In this document: in pieces, positions 7,934 to 50,730 of the stretch | Layout: every line of letters starts with the position of its first letter | Position numbering within the stretch: position 1 is the first letter of the stretch | Assembly: GCA_965649765.1 (NCBI GenBank) | Contig: OZ287758.1 | Coordinates: forward strand, 34,410,001 to 34,474,000 | From: Bispira polyomma | Taxonomy: Eukaryota | DNA length: 64,000 nt | Reading direction: 5' to 3' | Made by a program: the position numbers and the translations under genes | Notes under the pieces: model-generated | What the model was told of the DNA's origin: nothing | What the model saw: the letters and a program-made list of their open reading frames with translations, nothing else | The model's database searches: none

Positions 7934-9075
7934 AAAGTAATCATGTTGATAATTCTTTGACACCAGCTGTGAACGTTCCGTCTTCTAGAAACCTGAAAAT
8001 TTTGTTTAAAAGTATGATGTTTAATACGTGTCAACAACTTGTTTTAAGAATATATAGATAAAGGAATAATAAGTCAAGTCAGGATTACATTTCGTTCTTC
8101 AGTCATAAGCTTTTACGTTTACCACAACACTGCTTTAGGAAAAGAATTTTGAAAGAAAATAGGTTAAATTTTTTTAAAAATATCGAAGGAAAGTTTTTAA
8201 AAAGCAACTTCATGTATTGGTCATTCTTGTTAGAGAAGATATTTTTGTATTCACCGTTTCCAATAGTTATAGAATGCAGATTTTTTTGTGAATGTTATTT
8301 TAATATTGTTTAAATTATGATGTTAGATTTGTTTATTTTTACAGTGTGCCTAATAGGTCAAGGTCAGTGTTTTTGTGAGGGGGTGTTAACTTTTGATAAA
8401 ATCTCTAAATCCAATCTATTACGTCTATACTGTAATTGTAATTAGACTTTTATTGCGCTTAATCTCCCCTTACCAAAGGGGACTCTAAGGCGCACCAGCA
8501 CAAAAGACAGTTATCCAATTTCCAAAATCAAGGGACAGAAAAAGGGTCAGCAACATAGAGCGCGCCGGGGGGAACGCGCCCTGTAGAACCTCGATTATCC
8601 GACCTTCTATTATCTAAATATTTTATTTTATGATCTCCCTTCAATTCTCTTAAATTTTTGTTTTATAAATTATAAATAGTATTATAGGGAAATGCTGCTT
8701 CTTTTATCTAAACCTTCTATTATCCAAACAAAATCTAGCTCTCTCAATATGTTCGGATAATAGAGGTTCTACTGTGTTAAGGACATTTGTGTGTGGAGGG
8801 ATATTATTTAAACAGCTGTTTGTAACTTGATACCTGTATATATAGGAAGAATTGACAGCATATTATTAAAGATTAAATAGATATTTTTCCTAAAAGTTAG
8901 TATTAATTTTGAAATTTACAGTTCTAGACACTGGTTTTTATTACTATATATAGTTCAATGTAGTGTCTTCCATGTATTAAAAACCTCCAATGAAGATATA
9001 AACTTAAAAATTATAACATTAGGTGTGAGTTGTGACAATTCATTTTAATGGAGTTTTCAGATTGTGAGGATCGCC

Positions 9076-11316
9076 CTACTCCCCAACCCAAAGACCCCAC
9101 GACTTTTCCTTGTTCAATTTAGCCCCAGACGCAAAACCATAAAGCTCACATATATTCAAAATTTTAACAACCGACAACAAATTCATAATTACAAAAGTAC
9201 AGTCATCCGCATATTGACTAATCCTGCACTCAACTTTACTCCCCAGAATCTTAAAACCTGTGATATGAGTATCCCCTCTAATGACATTTGCAAATGGTTC
9301 TATACATAATACATATAACAAAGGTGATAAACTGCAACCTTGCCTAACACTTCTAGTAACATCAAAAGCTTCTGTGAAAAACCCATTAACTAAAACTGTA
9401 CTTTTAATACCAAAATATAACAAATTTACCCACTTAATAATTTCCGGACCAAACCCAAATTTCTGTAAAACTTTAAACATAAAATTATGATCCACCCTGT
9501 CGAAAGCCTTTGATTGATCTAAAGATAACATTATACATTTAATATTCTTCTGCCCAGAGTAATTTAAAATATTTCTTAGTAAATGAACATTATCTTGAAC
9601 TGACCTCCCCACAACTGCTGATGTCTGATCAATATTAACAATACTCCCCATTACCCTTTTAAACCTATTTGTCAAACATTTACTAATTATTTTGTAGTCA
9701 CAGCATAATAATGAAATCGGTCTCCAATAACTTAATAAATCAGCCTTTTCAGAATTTTTACACACTAAAGTAATTATTCCCAATTTTTGAGTATCAGATA
9801 AAGTTCCCTCTTCATAACATGTATTGGCCATATTTACAAAATAATCCCCTAAAATATCCCAATTTACTTCATAAAACTCCTTTGGCAATCCATCAAACCC
9901 AGGTGACTTTCCATTTTTCATATATTTTAAAGCCTCATAACACTCAAATTTGGACAAACTACCTTCACATTTCACCCTATCGACATCAGTTAAACTTGGT
10001 AAATCTTTTAGGAAATAATCTATTAAATTTTGATCAATTTCTTCTTTTGTAAATAAATCTTTATAAAATTGTCTAACATGTTTTAAAATATCTTCCCTCT
10101 GAGTGACAAAATTACCATCCCCAACATCAAGTTTCTCTATAAGTTTCTTTTCAGCTCTTTTATTTTCCAAATGCAGAAAATACTTGGAGGGCTTTTCATC
10201 ATTTTCCAGACCTTTAACTTTTGACCTTACCTTTGACCCCTCCTGGTAAGAATTTAACAAATTATTAGTTTCAATTTCAACCCTTTTAACATCTTTATCA
10301 TACTTATTAGAATTCATTCTAGATAAATTTCGAAATTTAAAAAATTCTTTTTGCAAATCTTTATATTTGGATCTGAAAACCTGATTTAACCTCTTAGAAT
10401 GTGCCACAATTATTATTTTACATTTTACTTTAAAGCTATCCCACAATTCCGGCATAACTCTAACTACACCCTTAAATTCACTTTCACAAAGATCTTTTAA
10501 GTCCAATCTTAAATCAATATCATTTAAAATAGAAGTGTTACATTTCCAATACCCTGGCCCCAAAACTTCTGAAAACCCATTTAAATCAAAACACACCTTA
10601 ACAATACTGTGATCAGAAATACTAAAAGGAACAGAAATGTGTGAAGTTGAAACAACAGATTTTAACAGCTTTCTTGACACATAGACCCTATCCAACCTAC
10701 ATAACACCTTTCTCCCCCCACCATTCCCCTCCCAAGTAAATTCCCTTTGTCCTTTGTGTAAATGTCTAAAACAATCTGTCAAGCCAAATTCACGCCTCAA
10801 TTGTGAAAATTCCTCCTTACCAATATCCCCAACTTCCATATTACCTCCTTTCTTATCCAAAGAAATACTTTCCACAAAATTAAAGTCACCACCCAATATT
10901 ACAAACTTTTTAGTCACCAAAAACCCTGACAAATTAATAAAATCCCTTCTTTCTGACGCATTATTAGGCAAATAAACATTAATCAATCTGTACTCAATCC
11001 CATTTATTTCCACATCTAAAATGAAATACCTCCCCTGAAAATCAAAATCAAAATTTAAGATTTTATATTTAAGATTAGACCCTAACAAAATCCCTACACC
11101 ACTTGAATGTCTATCCCCAAAAGACCAGAAACCTTTACCCCTATAACAACAAGCCCAATTTCTACCCTCTGAAATATTGACACAATGGGTCTCTTGAACA
11201 AACACAATATCCAAATCTTCTAAATTTACAATATTGAACACATTAAACCGCTTATCAGAACTTCTAAACCCCCTTACATTTAAAGACCCTACCCTCAGAT
11301 TAGTATTAAAACCCAT
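9076..11316 (-). CDS. ORF2 family A: AP endonuclease plus reverse transcriptase (C-terminus missing)
   Basis: SLNVRG, QETH, GGDFN, RLDR, SDH (APE); KSPGFDGLP, WRPISLL, LDQSKAFD, RQGCSLSP, QYADD (RT). Confidence 0.93.
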   Translation of the reverse strand: MGFNTNLRVGSLNVRGFRSSDKRFNVFNIVNLEDLDIVFVQETHCVNISEGRNWACCYRGKGFWSFGDRHSSGVGILLGSNLKYKILNFDFDFQGRYFILDVEINGIEYRLINVYLPNNASERRDFINLSGFLVTKKFVILGGDFNFVESISLDKKGGNMEVGDIGKEEFSQLRREFGLTDCFRHLHKGQREFTWEGNGGGRKVLCRLDRVYVSRKLLKSVVSTSHISVPFSISDHSIVKVCFDLNGFSEVLGPGYWKCNTSILNDIDLRLDLKDLCESEFKGVVRVMPELWDSFKVKCKIIIVAHSKRLNQVFRSKYKDLQKEFFKFRNLSRMNSNKYDKDVKRVEIETNNLLNSYQEGSKVRSKVKGLENDEKPSKYFLHLENKRAEKKLIEKLDVGDGNFVTQREDILKHVRQFYKDLFTKEEIDQNLIDYFLKDLPSLTDVDRVKCEGSLSKFECYEALKYMKNGKSPGFDGLPKEFYEVNWDILGDYFVNMANTCYEEGTLSDTQKLGIITLVCKNSEKADLLSYWRPISLLCCDYKIISKCLTNRFKRVMGSIVNIDQTSAVVGRSVQDNVHLLRNILNYSGQKNIKCIMLSLDQSKAFDRVDHNFMFKVLQKFGFGPEIIKWVNLLYFGIKSTVLVNGFFTEAFDVTRSVRQGCSLSPLLYVLCIEPFANVIRGDTHITGFKILGSKVECRISQYADDCTFVIMNLLSVVKILNICELYGFASGAKLNKEKSWGLWVGE

Positions 11317-11634
11317 AATTACATATATAAAAGAACTTTACAATATTAACTAAAAATAGCGTAAAAAAGTCATACTTCTATATAAATCTAAATACAAATC
11401 CTAATACATGCATTTACTCCTATACATATACAAACATATATATATACAAATATATACATATTAAAAAAGAACTGATCTGATCACAAAATACAATATCCAT
11501 CACTGTAAAAAACCAAAACAACATGTCCAAAACACAAGTCCAAAAAATCATAATCCAACTCCGTAAGCCAGGTCACATCCATCTGTTCTGTCCATGCCGT
11601 ATCCAATCTGACCATCAAAACACCACATCAGTTC

Positions 11635-21362: not shown

Positions 21363-24300
21363 TTACAAACAAATATCCAGACTATTATCAACTGTAACAT
21401 GACATAAATAGTTATTACCCTCCCATAACTTCTTAAACTTTGATAAAGAAAGACGCTTGAAGTCAGCTAAGATTCGTAACCTAATATTAGTAATAAATGT
21501 AAACTTAATATAATTATAATCTACATTCTTTTCTTTAAATTTATGCTTATTTCTGGCTACCCAAATAGCCCATCTACCCTCAGCTAACAAAATGATGAAC
21601 AAAATATTAAACTTAGAAAATTTTGACTTCTGAAAGACATTAAAAACAATATTTTTAGCAGTAACCTTAACAGTCTGCCCGGACACTTTAGATAATATAC
21701 CTTCTATAAAATTCCATAAGGATATAACAATTGGACAATTAAAAAATAGATGATCAACAGTTTCTACATGAAAATTACACAATACACATTTAGGACTCTT
21801 GACAATTTTATTGAGATGATATAAATAGGCATTAACCGGAACAATATGGTAAGTCGATAAGTGATGTTTTGACCTTCAGACAATAACAAAGAAATGGAAT
21901 TATTAGCAAAAGCTTCATCAAAATTAATATTAGGATATACCCCCCAGATACGAGGTAAAACATAATTCTTTTCCATCAAAATATCATAAACCTTCTTAAC
22001 AGTGAGCTGACTAAAATCAATATTGGGTTGTAACAGCACAAAATCCTTAAAATTGTCTAAAGCTTGTTGATAAAAATATGGCTTTTCAAAACTGCAAGGT
22101 AAAGTATTATCATAAACACAATCAAAAAGATATTTTCTCAAATCCATCCGAAGCCAAAACATAGCAAAATCTTTCCATTTCCTATAAAGACCATACAATA
22201 AACTACTAATATGAATGATAGAAAAAGCTTTAAGCTTGGTTTCAATATGAGATAAATCCAGACCACCCTTTAAAACAGTATTATATAATACTTCCCTCTT
22301 TAAAGCTTCAATCCTATCTGACCATACAAAATTAAACATTTTTGATTTAAACTTTCTTAGATAACATTCTGGCAAAGGAAAAACTACCCCAGTATACCAC
22401 AACTTACTCAGACCCAAACACTTTAATAATACAGACTTGCCATTCAAAGTTAGATTCCTTAACTTATTCAAATTAATAACTTTCTCAAATTGTGACCAAA
22501 CTGTACCCCACGTTTCTAACATACAATCACCATTACCCAACTGAACTCCACAAACTTTTAAAGAACTATACGACCACTGTAACCCCAAAAGATTCCTATT
22601 TGGATCACCCTAATTACCTATCCATAACCCCCAAGACTTTTCTTTATTCAACTTAGCTCCTGATACAAACCCATGCTATTCACAAATATTTAAAATCTTA
22701 GAAATTGACAATGTATTCATAACAACAAAAGTGCAGTCATCTGCATATTGCGATATCCGACAATCCACACCAGAACCAGGGATCCGAAATCCCTGGATAT
22801 GAGCATTAGCCCTAATAACATTACCAAAAGGTTCTATACACAAGACATACAATAATGGTGACAAACTACATCCCTGTCTGACACTACGCTTCACCGGAAA
22901 CAGATCTGTAAAAAAAACCATTAACTAATACGGTACTCTTAATGTCAAAATATAAAAGACGAACCCAATTAACAAAATCCGGTTCAAAACCAAATTTAGA
23001 CAAAACTTTAAACATATAATCATGATCAACACGATCAAAGGCTTTTGATTGATCTAAGGACAACAAAATACACTTCACTTCTTTCTGATGAGAATAATCT
23101 ATAATATTGCGCATTAAATGTATATTATCTTGTATTGATCTTCCAGGTACTGCTGCTGTTTGGTCCAAACTGATTAAATTACCCATAACTTTCTTTAAAC
23201 GATTAGTCAAAACCTTACTAATTACTTTGTAATCAACACACAAAAGTGAAATAGGCCTCCAATAATTAAGAAGATCAGATTTTTCAGAATTCTTACATAT
23301 CAATGTGACAACCCCTAACTTTCGAGTTTCAGACAAAGATTGATTTTTAAAACAAGAATTTGCAATATTAATAAAAGTATCCCCCAAGAAATCCCAAAAA
23401 GTACAATAAAATTCTTTAGGCAGCCCATCTATGCCAGGTGACTTATTATTTTTCATATCAAACAAAGCTTTATGACACTCCTGCTTAGTTAATAAACCCT
23501 CACACAAAATATTTTGTTCTTGATTTAAACACTTTAAGTCTTTTAAAAAATAATCGACAAGACTGATCAATTTCCTCTTTTTCAAATAATTCAATATAAA
23601 ATTGTCTAACATGCTTTAAAATATCATTCTTATCAGTAACACAAAATCCCTCCCCAATATTTAACCTATCAATAACTTTCCGTTCAGCCCTCTTTTTCTC
23701 CTTATTCAAGAAATACCGTGATGGTTTCTCAACAAAACTTAAACTATTAATTTTGGACCTAACCTTACAACCCTGGGAAAAACTATCTAAAACTTTATTT
23801 ATTTCAGTTTCTATTTCTTGAAGCTTACTTTTATAAAGGCCAAGAGTATTTTTATTTAAAGTCTGAAATTTCAAAAAATCACGCCGAAGTTCTTTATATT
23901 TAAACCTATGTGCACTATTAATTCTTTTAGAGTGAAGCTGAATGACATGCTTGCAATCAAATTTAAATTTGTCCCAAATAGCTGATGTAATTTCATCCAC
24001 CCCCTGTAAAATCTATCCCACAAAGCTTTAATATCACCTTGCAAATACGGGTCTTGAAGCACTGAAGTATTACATTTTCAAAATTCCGGCCCCATGCCAC
24101 CAGAAAGTTTGTTTAAATTCAATTTTAAGGAAACACAAGCATGGTCAGAAATACTGTTTATAATTGGCAAATGATCAAGAACTACAAAAGACCGCTTAAT
24201 AGATGTAGAAGTATAAAACCTGTCCAACCTACACAATACCCTACCCCGAGAACTTGTCCCCTCCCAAGTAAAAAGCCTCTTTGTTTTATATAACTCCCTA

Positions 24301-24929
24301 AATGGATCACATCAAGAAAAATCACTAACTAAACACTTCATTTCCCTACTACCAATATCCCCAGCTAAAACATCCCCACCTTTCTTGTCCAAGGCTAAGT
24401 CATCTACAAAATTAAAATCCCCACCTAAAAGTAATTTTCTTTTTGTAACCAAATATTTTGATAAATTTGAAATAAAGAGTTTTCTATCAACATTATTATT
24501 CGGAACATAAACATTAATCAAACGAAATTCCACATTATCAATATTTAAATCCAAAATTAAAAGCCTACCTTCAAAATCAAAATCATAAACATTAATCAAA
24601 CGAAATTCCACATTATCAATATTTAAATCCAAAATTAAAAGCCTACCTTCAAAATCAAAATCAAAACTGACTACATCATAACCTAAGGCTGAACTTAACA
24701 AGATTCCTACACCGCATGAATGTTTTTGTACAACAGACCAGAAAACTTTCCCCTCAAAAGTATTGTCCCAGTATTTAGCCTCCTTAATATTTGTACAATG
24801 CGTCTCTTGAATGAATAAAATGTCCCACCCTTCTAAAGAAAACATATTAAACAAATTCTGCCTCTTACCAATATCCCTAAACCCCCTTACATTTAAACTT
24901 GCTATATTTAACCCCCTATGACTTGACAT
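21363..24929 (-). pseudogene. ORF2 family C (APE, RT, zinc finger), multiple frameshifts
   Basis: Collinear ORF pieces with SLNVRG, GGDFN, KSPGIDGLP, QYADD, ETVDHLFFNC; in-frame 78-bp tandem duplication in the APE. Confidence 0.88.
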
Positions 24930-25279
24930 ATTTTCATAATAAAAATGTGTATATATACATATATATATATAAAAACAGACCTGCTAACAGTATACAATAT
25001 TCCAAAAATATAAAACCAAGTATAATGTCCAAAACCAAGTCCAAAATCATGTCCAAAATCCATCATCCAAGTCCAATCCATCAGTTCTGCCAAGGCCATA
25101 TCCACAAATCAAATCCGAAAGAAAAAACAAAGTCCGACAATCCAAAGAAAAACACAGACCGATAAACAAAGTCCAAGTCCGAAAATCATAGTCCATAAGC
25201 CGTATCCAAGGTCATAATTCAAAAATCAGAGTCCTGACCATAATCCAAAAAAACACAATCCTCAAACAGCTCCAGGTCG

Positions 25280-26413
25280 TCACTTAATAGTCTTTGAAGA
25301 TAGCTTGTCCTTCCGCCTCTTCTTCTTTGCCCTCTGGTCTTTAACCGTGTCATCCGTAGCCGTGCTGTCCTCGTCAATTACCAGATGCGAATCACTATCT
25401 GTCCCACCATCCGACACATCACCCTCATAATCATCTCTGCCTGGATGGGAATCATACAAGTCACTGGCCACGGTGCCGTCTTCAGCCGTATCCCCCTTAA
25501 CTTCCGCTGAAAAATCAGGACTGTTACCCATCTGACTGGCCCCATTGCCTTCTTTCTCAGCCATATTTGTCTGCCTTAAAATACTTTCATCACCTTGGTA
25601 ATTAACATCATCCCCCGGAAAATCACAACTCATAGCTGCCTCAGTCACTACCTTCCTGTTAGGGTCTGTCCTGGATGCAAAGGTATCCTCTTGACTCGGA
25701 CAATCTTTTTTAATGTGGCCAATGCCCTTACAGGCAAAACACACCGGCCCTCTCCCAGGAACCGTAACCAAGACTGAATACGAAGTCCCGCCGTACCAAA
25801 TACTGTCTAGACTAGGTAATATAACACCCTCTTCAGGCTCTAAAATAACACTTCTTACACTTGTCTTGACATGGTGACAACCATCAATGTTAGAGTAATC
25901 CCAGAAAAAACTCTTGACTAATCCAAACATAGAAAAATATGCAATCACATGCGCCCATGGCACAAACGCAGGCAACCAATGCAACTGCACCTTCACCAAT
26001 TCCTTGGATAAAGATATCAGTCTCGCCTTGTGATCCCTAATGATCAAATTGGCACTCAAAAGTGAAGCAGCCGAATCCTCAGACGTGAAAGATGCCAACC
26101 AAACATGATTTGAGTTCACCGGCCCAAAAGCCTCCAAAGTATCCATGTCTACATGTCGCCTCAAGGAATCCAACACATGATTTCTCAAATAGGGGTTTCC
26201 CTCCTTCGGCAATATTATCTTCACTGTGTAATCCCTTGAAGGCGGGTGGCTGTCCATACACACCAACAAATTCCTCAAAGACTGACTTTCCAAAGCCAAT
26301 TTTGCTGTCGCCAAAGTTTTCTCGAAAGAGTCCATATCATATCTGGAATACCTAATTTTGTAATCCACAAAAGAATCATTCATTGCTCTTGTAATAAAAT
26401 CATCATCTGCCAT
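25280..26413 (-). CDS. ORF1 family C: single zinc-knuckle protein
   Basis: LHWLP, PGRGPVCFACKGIGHIKKDC, basic C-terminus; lacks the second knuckle of A and B. Confidence 0.85.
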   Translation of the reverse strand: MADDDFITRAMNDSFVDYKIRYSRYDMDSFEKTLATAKLALESQSLRNLLVCMDSHPPSRDYTVKIILPKEGNPYLRNHVLDSLRRHVDMDTLEAFGPVNSNHVWLASFTSEDSAASLLSANLIIRDHKARLISLSKELVKVQLHWLPAFVPWAHVIAYFSMFGLVKSFFWDYSNIDGCHHVKTSVRSVILEPEEGVILPSLDSIWYGGTSYSVLVTVPGRGPVCFACKGIGHIKKDCPSQEDTFASRTDPNRKVVTEAAMSCDFPGDDVNYQGDESILRQTNMAEKEGNGASQMGNSPDFSAEVKGDTAEDGTVASDLYDSHPGRDDYEGDVSDGGTDSDSHLVIDEDSTATDDTVKDQRAKKKRRKDKLSSKTIK

Positions 26414-26510
26414 TTTGCAACAAAAAGAAAACCTCAACTCGAAAAACAACGAAAGATTCCTTAACTTAGAAATCGCAAATAAACCAGGCCAAGAGACTAC
26501 TTTGTAATCG

Positions 26511-26533
26511 TAGCCAAAAGGCCGAGAAGCGAC
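26511..26533 (-). ncRNA. RNU2: U2 snRNA 5' fragment (nt 1-23)
   Basis: GTCGCTTCTCGGCCTTTTGGCTA downstream of the PSE-like element. Confidence 0.9.
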
Positions 26534-27651
26534 GCCCTCAATTCAGTTCCAAGGACTTTTAGAGTCCAAGTGAACTGCTCAACTATGGTTGGTACTGTCT
26601 GAATAAAACTGTGAAACTGTCGTGGCGTGTCGCGCGGTTTGGGCCTTTCTCATGTGTGTCAGTGGCTGGTGGTCTGTGGCCAAGCTTTAGTGGCACTTTT
26701 AGTGCCACACTAGAAATGCCAGATTATGCCCCACACCAACACTGTGGCAGACTGCAGCACACTGGGCTGGCAGTCATGTGGAGTGTTGTCTGTCCTGCAT
26801 GGACGTTTTTAGGATAAAAATGCACTAAAAACAGTGGGAGAGATCACAGAGGACAAAAATACATTAAAAAACCCATGGTTCATCACTCAACTGACTGTTG
26901 GGGGGCAGAGTTAATTACAGGCGTGGGTGTGAGGCCAGACTGCCCGACATTCGGGTATGTTGAGGCCATGAGGCAGGCAGTCGGGCAGCAAGTATTCAGA
27001 AGCCATTAACCGTACGTGGGGCCAACTGTCAGGCTTTAAAAGGAGGCCCGGCTACTCGGTTGGGTTAGGGCTGTGGATCTCTCAGGATCTCTGAGGATCT
27101 GTGGGATCTGTCTTGAGTGGCTACTGTGCTCACAGGATGGATGTAGTGAGTGACTCAGTCAATGAATTAGTCAATCAATCAATCAAACAATTAACAACAC
27201 TCACTCGTCCCAATTGTGTAGTACACACACTTGTATGCACTGAGAAGTATTCTCCCCCTTTTCTGCTGCTGCTGCCATTCACAATATACATCTTCACACA
27301 GTCAGTAAGTTTTGATTCTATTTTCTAATAATCTATCAAGCAGTCGGTCAACCCAAATAAGAAAATAAATTGCCAATCAGTAACTGAGTACAAAAACCGA
27401 CATTGCCCACCAACAGTGAAATGAAATCAAAACACAGCACACATTTCAAACAAGTTTCTTTTATTTTCCTTTCTAGACATGCAGCCAGTCAGTCACCCAA
27501 TCACCCATGAAATGAAAACACCCAATTATTATTTTTTTTTTTTTTTTGCACTACTAGTTCTTTAAGCCTAATACACGACTAGATGGTCGCACACAGCAGC
27601 GCAAACTGAGTTGTGTTGGTTGTTCATTACTTTTTAAATCCCCAAGCTTGG

Positions 27652-27752
27652 GGGTGGGCCATTCCTGGAGGTACTGCAATACCAGGCCAACCCGTGGAGG
27701 GGTCGGAGCAAGCTCCTGCATCCCCTTCTAGTTCTAAAAATCAGTTTAATAT
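27652..27752 (-). pseudogene. RNU2: U2 snRNA 3' fragment (about nt 90-190)
   Basis: Sm site and stem-loops III/IV present; 5' half replaced by unrelated A-rich sequence. Confidence 0.92.
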
Positions 27753-28929
27753 TGATTAATATTTTTTTTACCTAATAATTGTACACTCCAACTTTTGAGG
27801 CACACTATTTTATCACCAGAGGGCTCAATGTGGGTCTAAAGGTTAAGCAAAGAACACTAAAAAGAGAATGAACAAACCAAAAGAACAGGCTTTTTAATAT
27901 GGTTTTACATAAACAAGGTACTATAAAGATGGTTTTTATTGATATATGATGCTAGATTTTGTTTCTTGTTTGTATTCTTCTTCTGTTGAGCTGATTCTAT
28001 TTTCTATTCTCCATTTCCTATTTTTCTTCTCCTTGTGTACTGTAGGTTTGGGATAGGCTTGCATATGTCGATTGATGTTTGGGCTGCCAGTCGATCCATG
28101 GTTAGGATTGATTGAGAGATTCCCTGCCACTGTGGTCTTGCTATGCTGAGAGAGCTAGAGGCCCTTAAAAGGCTTAGACATTTTCTTAATAAAAGAAAAA
28201 ACACTAGTTTGTTTGTTTGTTTTGTTTTATAGTCAAGACTTGTTTTGATTTCTATTTATCTATTATTGTTGTTTAAAATAAAGTAAATTGGCTAGTAGAA
28301 TTTTTTATTTTTAAAATAATTTAAGGTGATTTCTGTTTGGGACTGGCTTTTGCCATGTTATAGACGCATGGTGTCAAAGCCTGTCCAACCTTGAGAGGAA
28401 AATAATTTTTTTAGAAGATCTTAGCTATTTATAAACAATATATCACATATATTTGATATGTTTGTTCACTCACTAAACGTTTTACTTAAATCTTAAACAA
28501 GCTTGGTTATATAGTATTTGGTATTACATCAGTAGCTCAGCAAAAAGGTAGATTCAACGTCTCTTAAACCTTATAGTACTTGACCTTACATCCGTAACCC
28601 AGCAAGATGTAAGACCAAAATCTGTTAGGCCTGATGGGTGTAGAAATTAGCTTGCTTGTGTGGTACCTGGCCTTACATCAGTAACCTAGCATGAAGTTAA
28701 AGAGAGAGATATTTCTATGGGAAAGGGGGTGGTTTACTCGTTGCGTTACTTTTAGATTTCTTTACTTTATACTCAGTCTGTTAGGCTATTGCCGCAGAGT
28801 AGAGTATTTTACTTAATTGCTGTTACTGGGTTGTGCATTTTAATAGAGGTTTCATGATTGAACCAGTTGGTATTTTTTCTTTTTTTTAAATTCTATATTA
28901 AGGATAACACATTTTTAGCTGTTGTTCTA

Positions 28930-29448
28930 GGTTTTTTGTTCCAGGTTGGTTTAGGCCATCATTGTTGAAAAATTCTTTTTTGATAGTTGGTAGGTCCAAA
29001 GGATGTTGCTTATGTAGGAAGAATTTGACCTAGTTCCATGCAAGGTAGTGTCCTTTTTGTTTGTTTTTTGGTTGAGCCAATCTGTTAATTTTTTTATTTT
29101 TGGCCAAGACGATTCGTAATCTTTGGGTCTGGGTAGGATTGTGTTGAAGATTATTTTTAAATCTTTATTTTTTGTATGTGTCAGGTCTAAAAGCTCGACT
29201 ATGTCCATCTTTAAAGCAGAGTAGCTTTTCTGTTCAGTATCATTGGTTTCAATGTGTAGTATTAAGGTGTTGTAGCTGCTCAGATATGGGTTGTTATTTT
29301 GGAGTGTTTAAGTCAGTCGGGAAGTGGTACAACCTCTAAAACATTTCATTTCTGAGGTATATTCTTTACCTGCTTTTGTTGAATCCCACGATTGAACCCA
29401 TTTTATGATGCTGTCTCCTAAGATTAATATTTTGTGAGGGTCTGTCAT
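28930..29448 (-). pseudogene. SGNH/GDSL hydrolase-like ORF (one stop, one frameshift)
   Basis: MTDPHKILILGDSII...CFRGCT...LILHIETND...IIFNTILPRP...NDGLN match SGNH blocks I, II, III and V in degenerate form. Confidence 0.7.
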
Positions 29449-29756
29449 CTGGAATTACATAGAAGAGAAACCATTCATGTTTTAGTCTTAGGGTTTTTGT
29501 GTTCTCTAATCTGGTTTTGTTGGGCCTGGCTTGGTGTATTAATTTAGGGGTAAATTTTTTCCCAGTATCAGTTAGGCCATTTGTGCTGATTTCTGGTCAC
29601 ACCATTGATCTTAAATGCTACCTGATGGATGTTTTGGTATGTTTTTTACATCCTCTAGTTTATGGGGTTGAGCTAGGCTGTGGTTTGGATGTTTTAGGGG
29701 GTCGACACGATCACATTTTAATAATAGTCTGTTATATATATTTCTGATGGTGCATT

Positions 29757-29957
29757 TTAAGTTACACCAATTTCATATGAAATGGAGATCTTTTGATAGG
29801 TTAGGATTGTTCTTCTCATTAGTGGGTCTTTAGGTATTTTATGGAAAGAGTTTATCTGAGAAAAGCCATTTTTGAGATAGGGTTCTGTTTTTCGGCATGT
29901 GTTTAGTATATGATATTGAGTTTGAGGGGAGCCACATTTTGGGCAATTTTGCAAGGT
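29757..29957 (-). mobile_element. L1-clade ORF2 C-terminal CCHC fragment
   Basis: CPKCGSPQTQYHILNTC; appears to continue the fragment at 35438-35880. Confidence 0.55.
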
Positions 29958-30452
29958 AGCCACCCCGGGGCTAGTAAGGTCAGTGCTGTACCTTAAAAAC
30001 AATACTTACCTTAGTCAGATCACAGTGACCCCTCCTCTGATTGGCTGGCAGCTGGCCCACATATTAATTATTTCCCGTTAAAAGCATATAACCACCATTA
30101 AAATTTAAGAAACTGAAAGGGCAACACGCCATTTTAACTTATAAAATTTTTTGAATTTGTTATTGGATATTTTATACTTTACATCTTATTTACAAGTTTT
30201 AATTATTATTGTTGTGTGTGTGTACTGCCGAGAGGAGTCTCCGTCATACTGTGAAGGGAAAAGCTGGATTTCACTTCCATTATAGTCAATATTGGGCTTT
30301 GACATATGCGAATGCCGCTTCACTTTTGGAGCTACGGTTAAAGGGCTGTTCTCACTTCTATTCTGGTGTTAATTACATAAATTTACTAGTCAAATTCAAC
30401 AGCTCGGGATACGCATATATCAAAGCACAATTCTCCTTGTATATGATTTCAG

Positions 30453-31485
30453 ATGGCTCCGAGAAAAAAACTATTTATGTAACTCTTGCAATACCAAACA
30501 TGTAAAACCTATCAATGAAAATTGTCCCTATATTGAGGACGAGGAGACAGTTAGTGACAATGCTAGTGAAAGTAGTGACATTTCGGCAAAGGAAATAAAT
30601 TTACGGATTTTACAAGAACTTCAGCCATTGAATGGCCGTATGACGGCAGTGGAGAGTAAAGTGAACATTTCTGATCAATCTGCCTCGTTGGCAGCGTCTA
30701 GTGCTAACGTTAGCCTGTCTGGGGCGACTGCAAGACTATCAACTACCTCAGCGACAAGTCCTGGGCTACAGCAGCTGCCCAGTGGGATGGAAGATCTGTT
30801 GGTGCCATCCCTGACTACATTGAAGACGTCTGAGCATCTCCAAAGAGCTGTAGACTGCAGGTTGAAAGAACTGGCTCATTTAAACGACGCAGGTAACCAA
30901 AAGTCTCAGAGGGGTGGGTCAGAAACTGTTTGGGTAAAGAAAAATGTGCCCTGGCCACAAAACCACATTCTGGGGGGTCAAAATAAAAGCCGCTCATCGT
31001 ACGATAGTTTATCTATGGCCCAATGGGTCTCAGGGTTCTGTGCGATTATTAGGGATGAAAAAGATAATAATACCAAAGATTCAATGTTAGAATATGTGTA
31101 AGACCTCATGGAGGACGCGCACGATTTCTCCTGGAGTGCTGCAAAAGGCAGTCATGCAGTTCTGCTGTGCAGAATGGAGGAAGGGAAGGTAACTTGGCAG
31201 GACACTGCTAAAATTGATCGAATAAGAAGAGCTTATGCTCAGAAAATAGTTAGCAATGGCCACTCGGGTGCTTCCTCCACAAGATTTTCCACTAGCAAAT
31301 CTAGCGAAAAAGGGCTGCCTTGCAGATATTTCCAAAGGGGTGCTTGTACTAACAAAACAGATCATGAGACTAAAGGTCAATTGTACTTACATATATGCTC
31401 AGTTTGTCATACCAGTGGGAAATCATACCCCCACAGTGCTAGAGACTGTCACAAAAACAAGGCTAGTAATGCAAAAAATGAATGA
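30453..31485 (+). pseudogene. gag-like ORF of the YR retrotransposon
   Basis: N-terminal CNSCNTKHVKP...C motif, WPQ...YDSLSMAQWVSGF, C-terminal CRYFQRGAC...HICSVC...H...C. Confidence 0.7.
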
Positions 31486-32269
31486 GGCACTGCAAACAAG
31501 CAGTGCCTGAACCCCATGTTGATCAAGATTCTCGGGTTAAAGTAAACAAACCAAAATGTAAAAAGTTAACAAGAGAAAGGTGGTTTACAGAAAGAATTGT
31601 ATATAATTCCAAATGTGTGTCTAACTATATGTCTGGACAAGGGGGCTACCATAACTGGAGAGCAGATTTGGCAAAATATCAAAATAAAACTTATGCAGAA
31701 GTAGTACAAAAAAATCAAAATGTGGACATTGAAAACAAAAAAGTAAATAGGCTTGTTGCAAGTGTCAAAAGCACAGGCTCAGCTTATAGCCCCCTCGTCC
31801 AAAAAGAAATACTTTGTACAAATGTATATCATAACAATGACTCTGAAAGAAACGTGTAAAACCCAGAACAAACCAATTAGGCTTGTTCGACAAGGTGACA
31901 CCAAACTCGAGAGAACAAAGGCAAACTGCCACCTCCTGGGTAACAATAGGGTTACACAAAAGCGAAAGGGAACAATACCAGTGGTTGTGCGTGGTCAAGA
32001 AAGGGACATTCAATGTAACAATAGGTTTAACCCCCTTTTGGCCCTTACCGAAGTCGATCAAGTAGAACGACTAACTGACAACAGTGTTAATGACACTAGT
32101 AAAGCCCAAAAGTGTGTCAACAATACACGTGAGTTAAACTCAAATGTCAACGTGCCGGTGGAGGACAAATACCAATTAGAACTCCAAGTTAAAAAGAGGC
32201 ATAGGCAAACAGTTGAGTTAGCTAAAGACAACAAAACATTCCAAGCATGGAATGACCAGAATAAGGAAA

Positions 32270-33967
32270 AGTTTGGTTTTATACCTCTAGGAGATTTGTG
32301 TATACCTAGTACCATAAGCCATAACGTACCCATTGAGGCTCCACTGGCATTATATGAAAAAGTAAAAAGTCACAAAGTTCCAAATTATTTGGGTGCACAA
32401 ATTCCCGTACAATCTGAATTGAATGTAGCGAACTGGGAAAAGCTATTGCGAGACTACTGGGACAAACTTTGGTTTTCCATTAAATTTCGACAGAAAGAAT
32501 AACTTGCACCATACCGGGGATAACCATACATCGGCCACTCAATACGAGAGTGACGTAAAGGCATACTTAAAAGAGCAAAAAGACTTTGGTGCCATTATAG
32601 GCCCCTTTAAAAAACCTCCCATTGAAAAATTACATATATCACCCTTCATGACTAGGCCAAAGCCAGATGGGGATCTTAGAAGGGTAATTATCGACTTAAG
32701 TTTCCCTCACGGCCTAGCAGTGAACTCTTGCAATTGCAAGCAGTGAACACTTGCAATTGCAAGAGACACCTATTTGGGAACTCCCTTTCTGTTAACATTG
32801 CCAACTATTGATGATATTACCAAAAACATTGTTAAATTAGGAAAAGGAGCCTTATTATATAAGCTAGACATAAGTCGGGCATTCCGTCATGTGAAAATAG
32901 ACCCGGCAGACTATGAGCTATTAGGTTTAAAATTGGATGATATATATATCGATACATGCTTACCATTCGGCTATCGTCATGGAAGCGCGATTTTTCAGCG
33001 CCTAAGTGACGCCATACGCCATGACGTCACGTGGTTATGACGTCATCAACTATATTGATGACGTCATAGGTTTTGGCCAACAAGAAATAATACAAGAAGC
33101 CTTTAATACGTTAAAAACTTTATTTCAAGAGTTAGGTTTCACATTAAGCAAAAAGAAAATTGTAGACCCAAATACTAAGGTCATTTGCCTAGGTGTCCTT
33201 ATTGACACAGACACATTCACGGTCTCCATACCCGATGCAAAATTAAAATACAGGATATATGTAGTGCATGGAATAGAAACAAAACGTGTACAAAACGACA
33301 ATTGCAATCTTTGTTAGGCTCGTTACTATACATTTCCAAATGTGTAAAATCCTCTAGGGCATTTCTCAACAGAGTGTTAGACACATTGCGTTCAGCCGAC
33401 AATACAGCATGTATCAAATTGAATACTGTATTTTTTCAAGACCTAAATTGGTTTCAAAAGTTCTTACCTACGTTTAATGGAGTAGCTTTCTTTAACCATG
33501 CACCAATCACAGAGCAGGTCGAATTAGATGCATGTTTACAAGGGTTAGGCGCTAGATATGGGAACCAAGTATACACAAAACAAATTCCATTAGGATTTAG
33601 GGATTATACAATTGTACATTTAGAAATGATCAATATCTTAGTAGTCATACGAGTATGGAAACACCAATGGACGGGAAAAAAGTTGCTAGTCCATTGTGAC
33701 AATCAAGCGGTAGTGCATGTTTTGAATTCAGGCAAAACATATGATCTCACACTAGCAGCAATGGCAAGGAACATATTTATGGAAACAGCGCAATCAGACA
33801 TCGAGTTACGAACTGTCCATATATTAGAGAAAAATAGCTGTACAGCTGATTTGCTGTCCAGATGGCATTTGACAACCGATAATGTAGAAAAACTAAACAC
33901 ACTAATACCACGTCCAGAATGGCTATTAGTAAAAGATGATACTTTAGAATTGGACTGGTCAATATAA
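32270..33967 (+). pseudogene. RT and RNase H of the YR retrotransposon (frameshifted)
   Basis: RRVIIDLSFP, KLDISRAFRH, LPFG, NYIDD, LDACLQGLG, HLEM, HCDNQA, ADLLSR. Confidence 0.88.
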
Positions 33968-33980
33968 AATGTAATTTCAG

Positions 33981-34950
33981 GTCTGGATGGGTGGGTTGCA
34001 AAGGTAGCAGCCCAGGCAGCTCTTAGAACACAGCAAGCGTTTCGGCCTTCAACCAAAAAGTCCTACACAGTAATGTTTAGGGTCTTTCTTGCTTTTTGTT
34101 GCTTTGCAAATTTGGCTATGACGGCCATAACCACCCCGATACTCTTAGCCTTTTTGGAATGTTTAGTAGCAAACAACACAACCCACACTTCCATAGCAAA
34201 TTACCTTTCAGCAATAAAAGCAAATATGTCATTATATGGACTAGATATCTCAGCATTCAATGATCAGAGAGTCAAATACTTTCAAAAAGCTCTAGTGCTG
34301 CAAAAACCCTTCAGGGCTAAGATAAATGCAATAATTGACATTGATTTACTTGCGAAAATTAGCTTAGTCTGTGACTCCATGTATATGGGCCAAGTTTACA
34401 AGGCAGCATATCTGCTGGCCTTCTTATTTTTATATCAAACTTAGTTCCCCGTTCAGCTTCAGCATTTTCACCACTGCATCAGTTAGCCAGGGCTGACATA
34501 TTATTCGCCCCTCCTGGTGCTCATATCATAATTAAATGGACGAAAACACTACAGACAAGGGACAATGTAAAAGTTATTAAGATTCCAGTCCTCTCAAATT
34601 CACAGGTCTGCCCGGTGCAGGCCCTCCAAGTGCTTTTAGCAATCACACCTGGTTCCAAAAATAAACCTCTCTTTCAAATAAAGATAAATTCCAACTGGTG
34701 TCCGTTAACAGACACTAGAATTCGTAGAAATCTCAAAGCAATATTAGGTAGACTAGGATTGGAAGGTTCAAGTATCACATTCCATTCATTTAGACGATCC
34801 GGGGCCACCTTGGCCTTTAATTCACATGTGCCCATACAAGCAATCCAGAGCCAAGGCATCTGGTCATCAGACTGCATATGGCGATATATAACGCAAAATC
34901 ACGAAGCCTCGGACCAGGTTGCTCTTGCTTTCCAAGCACGTTTCTCTCCT
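33981..34950 (+). pseudogene. Tyrosine recombinase of the YR retrotransposon
   Basis: AFRPST...Y, SIANYLSAIK, KWTKT, CPV, HSFRRSGAT, IQSQGIWSSDCIWRY. Confidence 0.88.
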
Positions 34951-35437
34951 TCTACTACCCCCTATTTGGGCCTTGGTGCTCTTTCACTAGAATATATTTA
35001 CAGCATATTTTATACATCTATTCAAATTCTAAGGCCACCTTAAAATCAAATAACTTAATTTATGGTAACCTTAACTTCTGGTAAACTTAAATCAACTGAA
35101 TCTCAAAATCTAAGGTTACCTTATCTTCACTTTACTAAAAAACTGTTTTGTTTAAGGTTAACTTAATGTCAGTTTTCGTAAACTTAACTTAATTTATGGT
35201 AAACTTAAACTCTAAAGGTGGCCTTAAATTTTTAAAATTTTACAATCATTAATGTTTTATACAATCTGTACATAGCTTAGATTAGAAATTAAAATTCATA
35301 TCCCAACTGCTGGCTTTTCATTGCATAAAATCTTAGTAAACCTAATGTAAACCTAATACATAAATATCTTAAATCAACAATCAATTGGGTACGAGGCACT
35401 GAGTGAATTGTCACATATTTTTGTGTTCGTACAGCCA

Positions 35438-35880
35438 GCTTCTCGTAGGATGAGCATTGTTTTTATTCCTGTTTCTCTTAGTTTGGATATTGCTTGTGAT
35501 TGTAGGTTTCTCATATCATTCATGGTTGGGTCTTGTATGTCTAGGAGGTTGTTGTATATTTCTTTTACACTACTTGTTTTAAGGTTCATGTTAGATTGTA
35601 TATATTTCCTGATTTCTTTAATTTTGACGTTTTCTACTTGTCTATAACTTTGATTTCTTTGTGGTATTTTGTTGTTTAGGTTTGGGTATGGGCCAATTCT
35701 AGATCTTAGGATTATACTGTGGTGGGTGTTTGGGTTTGTTATTATTTCGGATACTTTTTGCCGATACAGGGCTTTTTGTCGAATGATATTATGTAATGAG
35801 ATTCCTCCAAATTTTTTGGGTCTTTCAAGTGTTGTTCTTTTGATAGTTTCTAAGGAAAAACAATGCTTGCGCATGTGCAA
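35438..35880 (-). mobile_element. L1-clade ORF2 post-RT fragment
   Basis: L.RPKKFGGISL.N and SVKEIYNNL motifs typical of the region between RT and the zinc finger. Confidence 0.55.
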
Positions 35881-37639
35881 CCGTCTGGTTAAAAATGTCT
35901 GTTTGTCGAGTTATTGATGAGGTGTATCACTTACGTAGCCTAAATTTCATCTTCCCAATATCGTTTTGATTGAATTTGTATAACTTCTAGTAAATCTGTA
36001 TTAAAACTGTTGCCAAATGTGGGCCAATTTGGCAGCTACACTTCAATATTGAAATGCCTGACCATGCAATCGAATGACGCTATGGAATGTGTCATGAATG
36101 GAGATATTTTGACCTTCTTTGACAATAACCGTGATTGGGAAAAATTACAATGTGCATTTAAATCAACCCAATATAGCAAGCATCATCATCACTGTTCTGC
36201 ACAAACCCAGTAATTGTAAGGAGAATCTTCAAACGCAATCTGATTTAAGCCCAGTTAAATGAGAGGATATACCCTACACAAAAGTTCCCAATCAACACAA
36301 AACATAAGCAACTATGAAAAAGTCTCAAATTGATAGATTCCAAAAGTTTAAGCATTTTTACATTGGCAATGTATTAAAAAGTGTCTTAATAGAATAAAAC
36401 TGTCATCTTCCTCCTACCAATGAACAACTACATAAGTATGACATATTTCAAAGTTGCCATCCCACTCCCTGCAAGAAATCTCAAATTGGTAAACCAATAT
36501 TAAGCAATCCCAATAGTTATGAACGTGTTAATATTATAAGTGCCATTACTTCTGCTGTTCTTAACAATTCACCCAAAACATGGACTGTCATAGGCTGTGA
36601 TGGGCCATCTTTCTTAATGTGCAAAAAACTCCAAAGACATAATCATCAGTGCAAATTGTGAAATCAAACATTTTACTCCCAAGATACTTTCAGTCATTTC
36701 AAGTCATGCCATTCCGAATCCAATTTCAATATCAACGAACACAAACTATTTCCTAATCCCCTGATTGTTGCAGGGTAAGACCATTATGAAATGAACACGG
36801 TGAAATGCATATTTAAATTAACATATAATGTTTTCTTGAAAGAAACAGCTCAGATTTTGGGCTTCAAAACTGAAAAAGCACTTCAGTATTGCACAAATGC
36901 TAGTGACCACCACAAGGTATGGCAAATCATCCAAATTACGCTTGAGAGTTTTTCTAAATACATGGTCCGCCCCTTTGTAGTGGAAGCTTTAGCAAACAAT
37001 GAAAATGTATCAACATCCAATTTCTTCACATGGTTAAACAAAGTCAAAAGTTAAAATTGCGTATTAATGCAAGAACTAGTGTGGTCTTATGTTTTGGCTT
37101 TAAATGTAGATGTATGAGAAGAAATTATTACCATGCAGTCCAATCATCTTTATCAAAATTTACACCATTATTTTATGGCACACACATGACTAAATCCATG
37201 GAAATCCATTACCATTACAACAGTAAAGTAAATTAAAATTAAGGTGTATAAACACTGTGACGTTATGCTACACCTAAAAACTTTATTACAATGTAATAAA
37301 TAATATATAAAACAAAACAAAATAACTAGACATACAAATGAAAGACAAAACAATGACTAGAATATAAAAACAAAAAAACAACAAAATGACTAGACATACA
37401 GATATATATATATATATATATATAAAAATACAAAACGATGAATAGAATATAAAGTATGTAATAAATAATATAAAGAACATCATTATAACAAATAAAAAAA
37501 AAAGCAATACTAACAAATAAACTACAAAACAATGACTACAAATACTAAAAACATTAAAAACCCACCCTGATGTATTTTGGCAGAACTCAGCACACAAAAG
37601 TCAATATGAAAGTCCAAGTACGTTTTCTTTCGCCCTCTC

Positions 37640-40564: not shown

Positions 40565-40810
40565 TTTGAATTTGAAATGGGATATTTAACGTCCACTCTA
40601 ATACCTATTTAAGTAATATTGGAACGGGTAGTTGGAAACGCTAGAGGAAACACTGCATACAGTTGATCAAGGTTCTGCACTGAAACCAGTGGCCCACAGT
40701 AAGGAACTACCACATAGGCATCGACGGGATTCGAACTCACGCCACCCAGAGGTGAGAGACCAGTGATTGTGAAGCGCAATGCTTGCTAACCACTAGGCCA
40801 CCGCGGCCCC
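40565..40810 (-). mobile_element. tRNA-derived SINE, copy 2
   Basis: Near-identical to 1387-1637. Confidence 0.9.
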
Positions 40811-50500: not shown

Positions 50501-50730
50501 TATTTTACAAAAAAATTAAAAATTTACACAATTTTTTTTCCATGACAGACTGTATTTATATAAATATATATATATATATTGAGATAATATATGGAGGAGA
50601 ATTATGGGAATTATATTTTTATCAAATATAACACTGCAACCTTTTTAACTTTAGGGTTAGACTCTGGAGGCTAGGTTAGGGGTATTATAGTCAGGGTTAG
50701 GTGGTTAGATCAGGGGGGCCAGGATTAGAA

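What the first reader, a model, noticed from the sequence alone, without database searches (positions are those of the whole stretch)
9067..27752. U2 snRNA tandem array fully occupied by three different site-specific Tx1/Keno-like lineages
Seen: repeating unit of PSE, U2 5' end, retrotransposon, U2 3' part and a 1.0-1.1 kb spacer. Spacers are near-identical, while the three inserts are clearly divergent (ORF1 of about 490, 418 and 377 aa; two versus one zinc knuckles). Both visible 3' junctions are at U2 nt 36/37. Established: Keno (Tx1 clade, APE endonuclease) targets U2 genes; Utopia also targets U2 but uses a restriction-like endonuclease, which is not seen here. Inference: several old lineages coexist and compete for one target in one array, an R1/R2-in-rDNA-like ecosystem in a snRNA locus. 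No U2 in this window is intact.
Basis: partly seen in the sequence, partly recalled or inferred. Interest (0 to 1): 0.8.

Follow-up and report, generated by a model that had tools for sequence, protein, structure and literature searches.

The report
Keno-like LINEs splitting U2 snRNA genes
Three neighbouring U2 snRNA genes are each split by a different strain of a jumping gene that lands only in U2 genes, but the stretch is a rearranged copy of the edge of a much larger, mostly intact U2 array, so it is a good new example of a known kind of genome parasite, not a saturated array.

Summary
Confirmed: on the minus strand of window 9068-27752, three U2 repeat units are each split at the same U2 position. 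The 3' flank starts at nt 36/37 of this species' 193-nt U2. The inserts are three different LINEs (A, B, C) with an APE endonuclease and a reverse transcriptase, 70-74% alike in DNA.

Not confirmed: that this is the U2 array, or that the array is full.
- The stretch, plus at least 30 kb of flank, is an inverted copy (95-98.5% identical) of the left edge of the real array, 4.9 Mb away on the same contig.
- That array has 162 intact and 17 interrupted units. The interrupted units lie towards its two ends.
- B and C are therefore copies of edge insertions. A ends at a rearrangement breakpoint (9067/9068).

All 19 interrupted U2 genes in the genome share one insertion site. The typed inserts fall into at least 7 lineages. 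Relatives in five other assemblies sit at the same U2 site or at one fixed U1 site.

Verdict: these are Keno-like, U2-specific elements. Several old lineages do coexist, but occupancy is about 10%. The scan earlier noted sister Tx1 families in a dispersed repeat of this genome (s1-686119).

The parts
27649..27752 (-). Terminal U2 fragment, nt 90-193. It marks the outer boundary of the array edge.
   Evidence: The same fragment stands at C11:29494831-29494936 in the main array.
26534..27648 (-). Spacer 1, with the U2 upstream promoter region. A PSE-like block (TTATTC...CAACC, about -65 to -45) is also present in a related species.
   Evidence: PSE function was not tested.
26484..26533 (-). U2 nt 1-23 (nt 1 is A>G) plus a 27-nt diverged U2-like leader shared with B.
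20871..26483 (-). Element C. ORF1 is 25280-26413 (377 aa, one CCHC knuckle). ORF2 is in at least 5 pieces with 8 breaks. The element ends in AATAAATTTTATGAAAATGAAAAA.
   Evidence: A copy 97.6-97.9% identical lies at C11:29496091-29501591.
20773..20870 (-). U2 nt 36-133. Nt 134-193 were lost by a deletion between two AGCTTG repeats.
   Evidence: The same deletion is present in the main-array copy.
19692..20772 (-). Spacer 2.
19602..19691 (-). U2 nt 1-23 (one mismatch), the 27-nt diverged leader (19642-19668), and a U1 snRNA nt 8-53 fragment (19602-19646) inside B's 5' UTR.
   Evidence: (95.7% identity, E 9e-16).
14378..19641 (-). Element B. ORF1 is 18257-19513 (418 aa, two knuckles). ORF2 is broken into 15927-18008 (APE plus RT start), 15140-15463 and 14550-15152 (zf-RVT). 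It lacks the canonical 3' motif.
   Evidence: Copies lie at C11:29502808-29508018 (97-98%) and 29788752-29794014 (97%).
14220..14377 (-). U2 nt 36-193, with 2 mismatches.
13205..14219 (-). Spacer 3, with the promoter region.
13157..13204 (-). Exact U2 nt 1-48, directly in front of element A.
   Evidence: The same junction is seen in the second A copy at C11:29802187-29802629.
9068..13156 (-). Element A, the 5' 4.09 kb only. ORF1 is 11635-13140 (501 aa, two knuckles). ORF2 is 9076-11316 (746 codons open, APE plus RT) and is cut off by the breakpoint.
   Evidence: (98% copy at C11:29802372-29806470).
9067..9068 (.). Rearrangement breakpoint. Window 1-9067 is 98% identical to C11:34616055-34625335, and that homology stops exactly here. 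From 9068 on, the window is the inverted copy of the array edge.
27753..58700 (-). Copy of the left flank of the main U2 array (95-98.5% to C11:29468737-29494830). It is interrupted by a window-specific 5.4-kb insert at 29950-35401.

Best explanation
Window 9068-27752 is three units of a U2 snRNA tandem repeat. Each unit is disrupted at the same nucleotide by a different lineage (A, B, C) of a U2-site-specific, two-ORF non-LTR retrotransposon. The elements are of the L1/Tx1 type: ORF1 has CCHC knuckles and ORF2 has an APE endonuclease, a reverse transcriptase and zf-RVT. In other words they are Keno-like.

Inferred mechanism:
- The endonuclease nicks the bottom strand of U2 at nt 36/37, and target-primed reverse transcription starts there from a conserved 3' end (AATAAATTTTATGAAAA plus an A tail).
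- The second nick falls near nt 47/48, giving an 11-13 bp duplication when the 5' end is simply joined (A, D).
- The element has no visible promoter of its own. It is most likely transcribed from the U2 promoter, so its RNA starts with a U2-derived leader.
- In B, C and E the 5' junction appears to form by homology between that leader and the target's U2 5' end.

The locus itself is not the genome's U2 array. It is an inverted copy, 95-98.5% identical and including at least 30 kb of flank, of the left edge of the main array at C11:29.495-29.85 Mb. It is joined at 9067/9068 to unrelated DNA. The main array has 162 intact and 17 interrupted units, with insertions of at least 7 lineages lying towards its two ends. 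So B and C were inherited by duplication, or are allelic, rather than newly inserted here.
For: Shown:
- Domain content.
- The closest solved protein is human L1 ORF2p, E 5e-64.
- Exact U2 pieces and junctions.
- 162+2 intact target sites and 19 interrupted U2 3' parts genome-wide. All the interrupted ones are on C11 and share one junction. None is found elsewhere even at 3 mismatches.
- Map of the main array.
- Window-to-array-edge collinearity, including the shared U2 90-193 fragment and the shared U2 36-133 deletion.
- Homology of window 1-9067 to another locus ends exactly at 9067.
- Relatives at the same U2 site in three other assemblies.
- Deep lineages in the tree.
- D carries its own U2-like leader after a complete target U2 nt 1-47. 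B, C and D leaders share derived changes such as TAA>TAC.
- The 3' motif is conserved across lineages and species.

From the literature: Keno is the APE-type Tx1-clade family specific for U2, with a precise 3' and a variable 5' boundary (PMC4640811, PMC4494074).

Inferred, not shown: transcription from the U2 promoter, the positions of the nicks, and homology-mediated 5' joining.
Against: - No Tx1 or Keno reference sequence could be brought into a tree, so clade membership rests on architecture plus target.
- PMC4640811 gives nt 39 as the first U2 base after Utopia, and says Keno's 3' flank is identical. Here the flank starts 2-3 nt earlier in most copies, and at nt 40 (canonical 39) in one copy (C11:29508533).
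- B in the window lacks the canonical 3' motif.
- No read or RNA data could be obtained, so neither the join at 9067 nor any transcript is verified.
- I assume that all 162 forward-strand intact sites lie in the C11 array. 110 were seen directly (98 listed, 110 by BLAST). The rest are inferred from strand and spacing.
Confidence: 0.85

Rival explanations
1. The window copy is not a second locus of the haploid genome. It is an unpurged alternative haplotype, for example the proximal breakpoint of a heterozygous inversion of about 4.9 Mb whose other end lies next to C11:34625335. The three units would then be the allelic left edge of the one U2 array.
For: Two unrelated 'duplications' meet at 9067/9068 and both are about 98% identical to their partners. 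The reverse complement of the window reads left flank, C, B, A 5' part, then inverted X, which is exactly the junction such an inversion predicts.
Against: - There is no gap (N) in the window.
- Many structural differences separate the copies: a 410-bp inversion, a leader deletion and a 490-bp extra piece in the main-array B; a 5.4-kb insert in the window flank; and A versus D in the third unit.
- Divergent haplotypes could also show all of this, so the matter is unresolved because reads were unavailable.
Confidence: 0.45
2. One reading: an independent small U2 array into which three lineages inserted separately until it was full.
For: All three units in the window are occupied, by three different elements.
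Against: C and B, the U2 90-193 fragment, the U2 36-133 deletion and the flank are collinear and 97-98% identical with the main array's left edge. The genome's array is about 90% intact.
Confidence: 0.03
3. The join at 9067/9068 is a chimeric assembly error, and the three units simply belong to the main array.
For: The breakpoint lies inside a repeated element (A). Repeats are where assemblers mis-join.
Against: The copy differs from the main-array edge by 2-5% and by several indels over about 50 kb, so it is a distinct molecule. The other side also has its own 2%-diverged partner.
Confidence: 0.08
4. The inserts are ordinary, non-specific LINEs, or the RLE-type Utopia, that merely accumulated in a tolerant repeat.
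For: Sister families of the same clade do sit outside U2.
Against: All 19 interrupted U2 genes share one junction, whichever typed lineage (at least 7) is inserted, and the site is conserved in other species. ORF2 has an N-terminal APE domain and no restriction-like endonuclease.
Confidence: 0.02

Closest known systems
Keno (Tx1 clade, U2 snRNA-specific non-LTR retrotransposon; Kojima & Fujiwara 2004, as cited in PMC4640811 and PMC4494074)
   Same: APE plus RT in ORF2; two ORFs; strict insertion into U2 genes in the conserved region around nt 35-40; a precise 3' boundary and variable 5' boundaries; poly(A)-type tail.
   Different: Not placed by phylogeny against Keno references. Here at least 7 lineages share one array. 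The elements carry a U2-derived, partly mutated 5' leader, and B also carries a U1 fragment. Sister lineages in related assemblies target U1. The host is apparently outside the groups listed for Keno (vertebrates, lancelet, hydra), but I did not identify the organism.
Utopia (RLE-type, U2-specific; PMC4640811)
   Same: The same target gene and nearly the same site. In Phytophthora, different families are inserted in one U2 array, which is a precedent for coexisting lineages.
   Different: Utopia has one ORF with a C-terminal restriction-like endonuclease. The elements here have an N-terminal APE domain and a separate ORF1.
R1 and R2 in rDNA arrays
   Same: Site-specific LINEs in a tandem multigene family; only a fraction of units occupied; presumed co-transcription with the host gene; inserted units clustered; amplification of inserted units by unequal crossing-over (E x3, A' x5).
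   Different: The target is a Pol II snRNA gene array of about 180 units. The lineages all use one site rather than two sites. There is no evidence for a ribozyme or an IRES.
Tx1L in Tx1D, and crocodilian Tx1-Mar in Mariner-N4 (PMC4494074)
   Same: Sister families in this genome insert at one site of a dispersed repeat (earlier finding s1-686119).
   Different: Those families are not in the window. A, B and C are U2-specific.

Membership tests
Keno (U2-specific Tx1-clade LINE) | ORF2 with an N-terminal apurinic/apyrimidinic-like endonuclease followed by a reverse transcriptase | tested here: met
   Pfam Exo_endo_phos plus RVT_1 (plus zf-RVT) in A, B, C and D. Human L1 ORF2p is the best solved match.
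Keno (U2-specific Tx1-clade LINE) | Copies inserted specifically in U2 snRNA genes with one precise 3' junction | tested here: met
   All 19 interrupted U2 3' parts are on C11, with one junction (18 at nt 36/37, 1 at nt 39/40). None is found elsewhere at up to 3 mismatches. All copies at least 90% identical to A, B or C are in U2 units.
Keno (U2-specific Tx1-clade LINE) | The same nucleotide position as published Keno (3' flank identical to Utopia's, which starts at U2 nt 39) | tested here: inconclusive
   Here the flank starts at canonical nt 35/36 in most copies, and at canonical nt 39 in one (C11:29508533). The A tail and numbering differences leave 2-3 nt open. The figure in PMC4640811 is not held.
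Keno (U2-specific Tx1-clade LINE) | RT phylogeny inside the Tx1 clade, clustering with Keno references | not testable with these tools
   No named Tx1, Keno or L1-clade TE references were returned.
Utopia | A single ORF with a restriction-like (PD-(D/E)xK) endonuclease C-terminal to the RT | tested here: not met
   Two ORFs. APE lies at residues 19-246 of D's ORF2. The C-terminal part has only zf-RVT.
R1/R2-like 'array ecosystem' | Several lineages maintained in one tandem gene array, with most units left intact | tested here: met
   At least 7 lineages (A/A', B, C, C', D, E, F) in one array, with 17 interrupted and 162 intact units. The tree shows deep splits.
R1/R2-like 'array ecosystem' | Co-transcription with the host gene | not tested
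   Only indirect evidence: the ORF1 ATG lies 16-120 nt after a U2-derived leader, and D's own leader follows the target's U2 1-47. RNA data were unavailable.

The most novel reading that the evidence does not exclude
This clade of snRNA-gene-specific LINEs switches repeatedly between U2 and U1 genes, and it records its history in its 5' leader.
- Elements are transcribed from the host snRNA promoter and carry a copy of the snRNA 5' end.
- In B, C and D the U2-derived leader has mutated exactly across the target site, so the element's own leader can no longer be hit.
- B still carries U1 nt 8-53 behind its U2 leader. This could be a fossil of an earlier life in U1 genes.
- U1-specific branches occur in other assemblies (relatives P0002, P0004, P0006, P0021). 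I found no description of such elements in the searchable literature.
Probability: 0.35. Interest if true: 0.7.

Novelty: new member of a known kind. Interest (0 to 1): 0.5.

Why it matters
U2-targeting LINEs are known, but they are usually described from a few copies.

This chromosome-scale assembly shows a whole U2 array of about 180 units with its parasites in place:
- About 10% of units are occupied.
- Insertions lie towards the two ends of the array, and a central stretch of about 170 kb is clean.
- Inserted units have been amplified by unequal crossing-over.
- At least seven lineages share one nucleotide position.

That makes the locus a small, tractable counterpart of the R1/R2-rDNA system for studying how site-specific elements coexist in a limited niche.

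The leader data give a testable model of promoter hitch-hiking on a Pol II snRNA promoter. The U1-inserted relatives suggest that APE-type target specificity can be re-aimed between unrelated snRNA sites, which is of interest for targeted-integration tools.

For the scan, the practical lesson is that the window alone was misleading: the 'saturated array' is a duplicated or allelic array edge.

Tried and rejected
I did not try another route.
The right part of the array (29.68-29.85 Mb) and the dispersed copies are therefore known only as coordinates and short pattern matches. I did not walk along the genome with chained patterns to get round the cap.
- Clade naming: the big protein search, the Atlas and the cluster look-up returned no informative names, so there are no Tx1 or Keno references for a tree.
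- U1-specific copies in this genome: the pattern of the 3' motif followed by the U1 flank gave no match, so U1 targeting is seen only in other assemblies.
- Window 47786-64000 as a DNA query was swamped by a high-copy Gypsy repeat. A narrower query worked.
- The 'careful' tree did not finish in time. The quick trees under two models agree on the starred nodes I cite.
- B and C ORF2 were read through with X at each break, only to place them in the tree.
- The 490-bp piece between B and U2 in the main array has no extended match to anything held. Whether it is B's true 3' end or a nested 5'-truncated insert stays open.
Full report
**1. What is in the window**

Rfam finds four partial U2 matches, all on the minus strand, and no intact U2. 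I compared them with an intact 193-nt U2 of the same genome. This species has one extra A in the run at nt 29-31. Reading the minus strand from high to low coordinates, the layout is:
- U2 nt 90-193 (27752-27649)
- spacer
- U2 nt 1-23, a 27-nt diverged leader, then element C (26483-20871)
- U2 nt 36-133 (20870-20773)
- spacer
- U2 nt 1-23, the same 27-nt leader, then element B (19641-14378)
- U2 nt 36-193 (14377-14220)
- spacer
- an exact U2 nt 1-48 (13204-13157), then element A (13156-9068)

Each element has an ORF1 with CCHC knuckles. ORF1 is 501, 418 and 377 aa from the first ATG, with two knuckles in A and B and one in C. Each also has an ORF2 with Exo_endo_phos (APE) and RVT_1, and zf-RVT where the C-terminus is present.

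ORF2 is broken in B and C. In A it is open for 746 codons but cut off at 9068. The spacers are 93-96% alike and the elements 70-74% alike.

**2. The window is not the U2 array**

The window is G000:C11:34410001-34474000. A U2 search of the genome found a long array of intact U2 genes on the same contig, near 29.5-29.6 Mb, with a 1284-1296 bp period.

I fetched 200 kb of it. It holds 110 intact U2 genes and, at its left end, interrupted units.

A pattern spanning the insertion site matches 162 times on the forward strand and twice on the reverse strand. The two reverse matches are solitary U2 genes on C3 and C5.

A pattern for 'U2 nt 40 onward not preceded by U2' finds 19 sites at up to 3 mismatches:
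- 17 at C11:29.50-29.85 Mb: six between 29.5016 and 29.5428 Mb, and eleven between 29.7136 and 29.8483 Mb
- 2 in the window
- none anywhere else

Occupancy of the main array is therefore about 17 of 179 units (about 10%). Insertions lie towards both ends, and a central stretch of about 170 kb is clean.

**3. The window is a copy of the array's left edge**

BLAST of the window against the fetched region shows inverted collinearity from window 14379 up to at least 47785 with C11:29508048 down to 29480001, at 97-98.5% identity. A further search extends this to window 58700 and C11:29468737.

The two copies share:
- the terminal U2 fragment
- element C (97.6-97.9%)
- the U2 36-133 deletion between two AGCTTG repeats
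- element B (97-98%)

The main-array B additionally has a 410-bp inversion, a deletion of its leader and about 490 bp of extra sequence before U2. The window flank has a 5.4-kb insert of degenerate LTR-retroelement type.

In the third unit the window has A, whereas the main array has D, which is 72% identical to A in DNA. The closest copy of A (98%) lies near the right end of the array and has the same 5' junction.

Left of 9068, the window (1-9067) is 98% identical to C11:34616055-34625335, and that homology stops exactly at 9067. So 9067/9068 is a rearrangement breakpoint inside A's ORF2.

Two readings remain open:
- a real inverted segmental duplication
- an alternative haplotype kept in the assembly. 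The reverse complement of the window is exactly the junction expected from an inversion between the array and 34.625 Mb.

Either way, B and C are not fresh local insertions.

**4. Site specificity and lineages**

Eighteen of the 19 interrupted U2 genes have the element's tail directly followed by GTATCTG (nt 37 onward). One has the A tail followed by TCTG.

By DNA and protein searches the array holds these lineages:
- A, plus five A' copies at 14-kb spacing. A' is 93% identical to A in ORF2 only.
- B, in two copies
- C, plus an internally deleted copy
- C' (75% to C)
- D
- E, in three copies that differ at 5-8 of 5724 positions
- F, in tandem with B

D and E have both ORFs open. Several A' copies have no stop within the ORF2 match.

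All copies at least 90% identical to A, B or C lie in U2 units. More distant relatives lie on other contigs: B-like at 76-79% DNA identity, and D-like at 83-86% protein identity.
- They share the 3' motif AATAAATTTTATGAAAA but have other flanks.
- At least 9 are followed by GTTGCTGAAAT, which at several of these and other copies continues as ATACTGCCT, a dispersed repeat.
- The D-like copies have variable flanks.
- This agrees with earlier scan finding s1-686119 on the same contig.

**5. Relatives elsewhere**

The closest proteins in the public collection come from other assemblies.

| Target | Relatives | Context |
|---|---|---|
| U2 | P0001, P0003 (ERZ22147071) | interrupted U2 units in tandem |
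| U2 | P0005 (ERZ28496113) | U2-U6-U5 array |
| U2 | P0010 (ERZ25084518) | U2 |
| U1 | P0002, P0004 (ERZ22147071) | U1-5S arrays |
| U1 | P0021 (ERZ26696836) | U1 |
| U1 | P0006 (a Logan contig) | contig starts with U1 nt 5-32 |

- In all U2-inserted relatives the 3' flank starts at U2 nt 36, and the 5' flank ends at nt 31-51.
- In the U1-inserted relatives the 3' flank starts at U1 nt 35-39 where the junction is held (P0002, P0004, P0021). The 5' flank ends at nt 27 (P0002) or 63 (P0004).

Trees under two models give starred support for (A,B), for (C,E), and for D with the U1-specific P0002. They also support a clade of these with P0001 and P0003, then P0004, then P0005. At least 4 U1/U2 changes are needed among the 13 typed rows.

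The lineages in this array are therefore old relative to at least one species split.

**6. How it probably works**

Shown:
- D's 5' junction is the target's U2 nt 1-47, followed by the element's own U2-like stretch (about nt 8-27 with substitutions).
- The B, C and D leaders share derived changes relative to U2, for example TAA>TAC at nt 22-24. They are diverged precisely over nt 24-45, the target site.
- E has its own variant leader.
- A follows an exact U2 nt 1-48, with the ATG 16 nt later.
- The units keep the same upstream region as intact units, including a block conserved in a related species.

Inferred:
- Elements are transcribed from the U2 promoter as U2-leader fusions and are polyadenylated at the conserved AATAAA.
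- TPRT starts at a bottom-strand nick at nt 36/37.
- The 5' end is joined either at a top-strand nick near nt 47/48, giving an 11-13 bp duplication (A, D), or by homology between the cDNA's leader and the target's U2 5' end (B, C, E).

**7. Side observation**

B's 5' UTR contains U1 snRNA nt 8-53 (window 19646-19602; 95.7% to the U1 of a related assembly, E 9e-16). It may be a relic of a U1-resident ancestor or of a template switch onto U1 RNA.

**8. Comparison with what is known**

Keno is the APE-type Tx1-clade family specific for U2. It is reported from vertebrates, lancelet and hydra, and its 3' flank is identical to that of the RLE-type Utopia (PMC4640811, PMC4494074). Different Utopia families co-occupying one U2 array are described for Phytophthora (PMC4640811).

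The known Tx1-clade targets listed in PMC4494074 are U2, U5, 5S, satellites, microsatellites and transposons. I found no paper in the library on a U1-targeting non-LTR element. Absence from this library is weak evidence.

Architecture and target fit Keno. The closest solved protein is human L1 ORF2p. Utopia is excluded because the elements have an APE domain and no RLE. A phylogeny against named references could not be run.

**9. Verdict**

The feature is real and well supported. It is a new member, or rather a set of members, of a known kind.

The headline claim of a fully occupied array is wrong. The multi-lineage coexistence is right, and it is better seen in the main array. The leader structure and the U1-inserted relatives are the most novel leads.

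Noticed in passing
window 19602-19646 (-): The 5' UTR of element B contains U1 snRNA nt 8-53 (95.7% to the U1 of a related assembly, E 9e-16). It sits directly behind the diverged U2-like leader. The main-array copy of B has lost this stretch by deletion.
   Followed up: partly
L051:4509-10128, L055:3335-8175, L059, L057 (other assemblies): Close relatives (39-69% aa identity to D's ORF2) are inserted in U1 snRNA genes at one site. The 3' flank starts at U1 nt 35-39 where the junction is held (P0002, P0004, P0021). The 5' flank ends at nt 27 (P0002) or 63 (P0004). In one assembly the host is a U1-5S linked array. The tree needs at least 4 U1/U2 switches. I found no paper in the library on U1-targeting LINEs.
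   Followed up: partly
G000:C8:48486915, C11:11985549, C10:14182170, C2:29493859 and others: Sister families share the 3' motif AATAAATTTTATGAAAA. At least 9 copies are followed by GTTGCTGAAAT, which at several of these and other copies continues as ATACTGCCT, a dispersed repeat. This matches earlier finding s1-686119. D-like copies on C1, C5, C6, C12 and C13 have variable flanks.
   Followed up: partly
G000:C11:29709484-29781844: Five A' copies at about 14.3-kb spacing match A only from nt 1720 on (ORF2, 93-94%), not in the 5' UTR or ORF1. This suggests an ORF1 module swap between lineages, and amplification as a higher-order repeat together with 5-6 intact U2 units.
   Followed up: no
G000:C11:29508049-29508539 (L033) and C11:29794014-29794326: Both other copies of B carry 310-490 bp more sequence between B's end and U2. 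That extra sequence ends in the canonical 3' motif, which the window's B lacks. It is either B's true 3' end, lost in the window, or a nested 5'-truncated insertion made after the duplication.
   Followed up: partly
window 1-9067 versus G000:C11:34616055-34625335: A 98% direct copy lies 206 kb downstream, and its homology ends exactly at the A breakpoint. Together with the inverted array-edge copy, this fits either nested segmental duplications or a retained inversion haplotype.
   Followed up: partly
window 29950-35401: A 5.4-kb stretch absent from the main-array flank copy. It has a degenerate RT_RNaseH-like ORF (33302-33967), so it is probably an LTR-retroelement insertion specific to this copy.
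   Followed up: partly
G000:C11:29646, 29654 and 29672 kb (L047-L050): Three units of the otherwise uniform array have a period of 1734-1737 bp instead of 1284-1296 bp, that is, about 440 bp extra in the spacer.
   Followed up: no
L056 (ERZ28496113): In another assembly U2, U6 and U5 genes are linked in one repeat unit. In ERZ22147071, U1 is linked with two or three 5S genes per unit.
   Followed up: no
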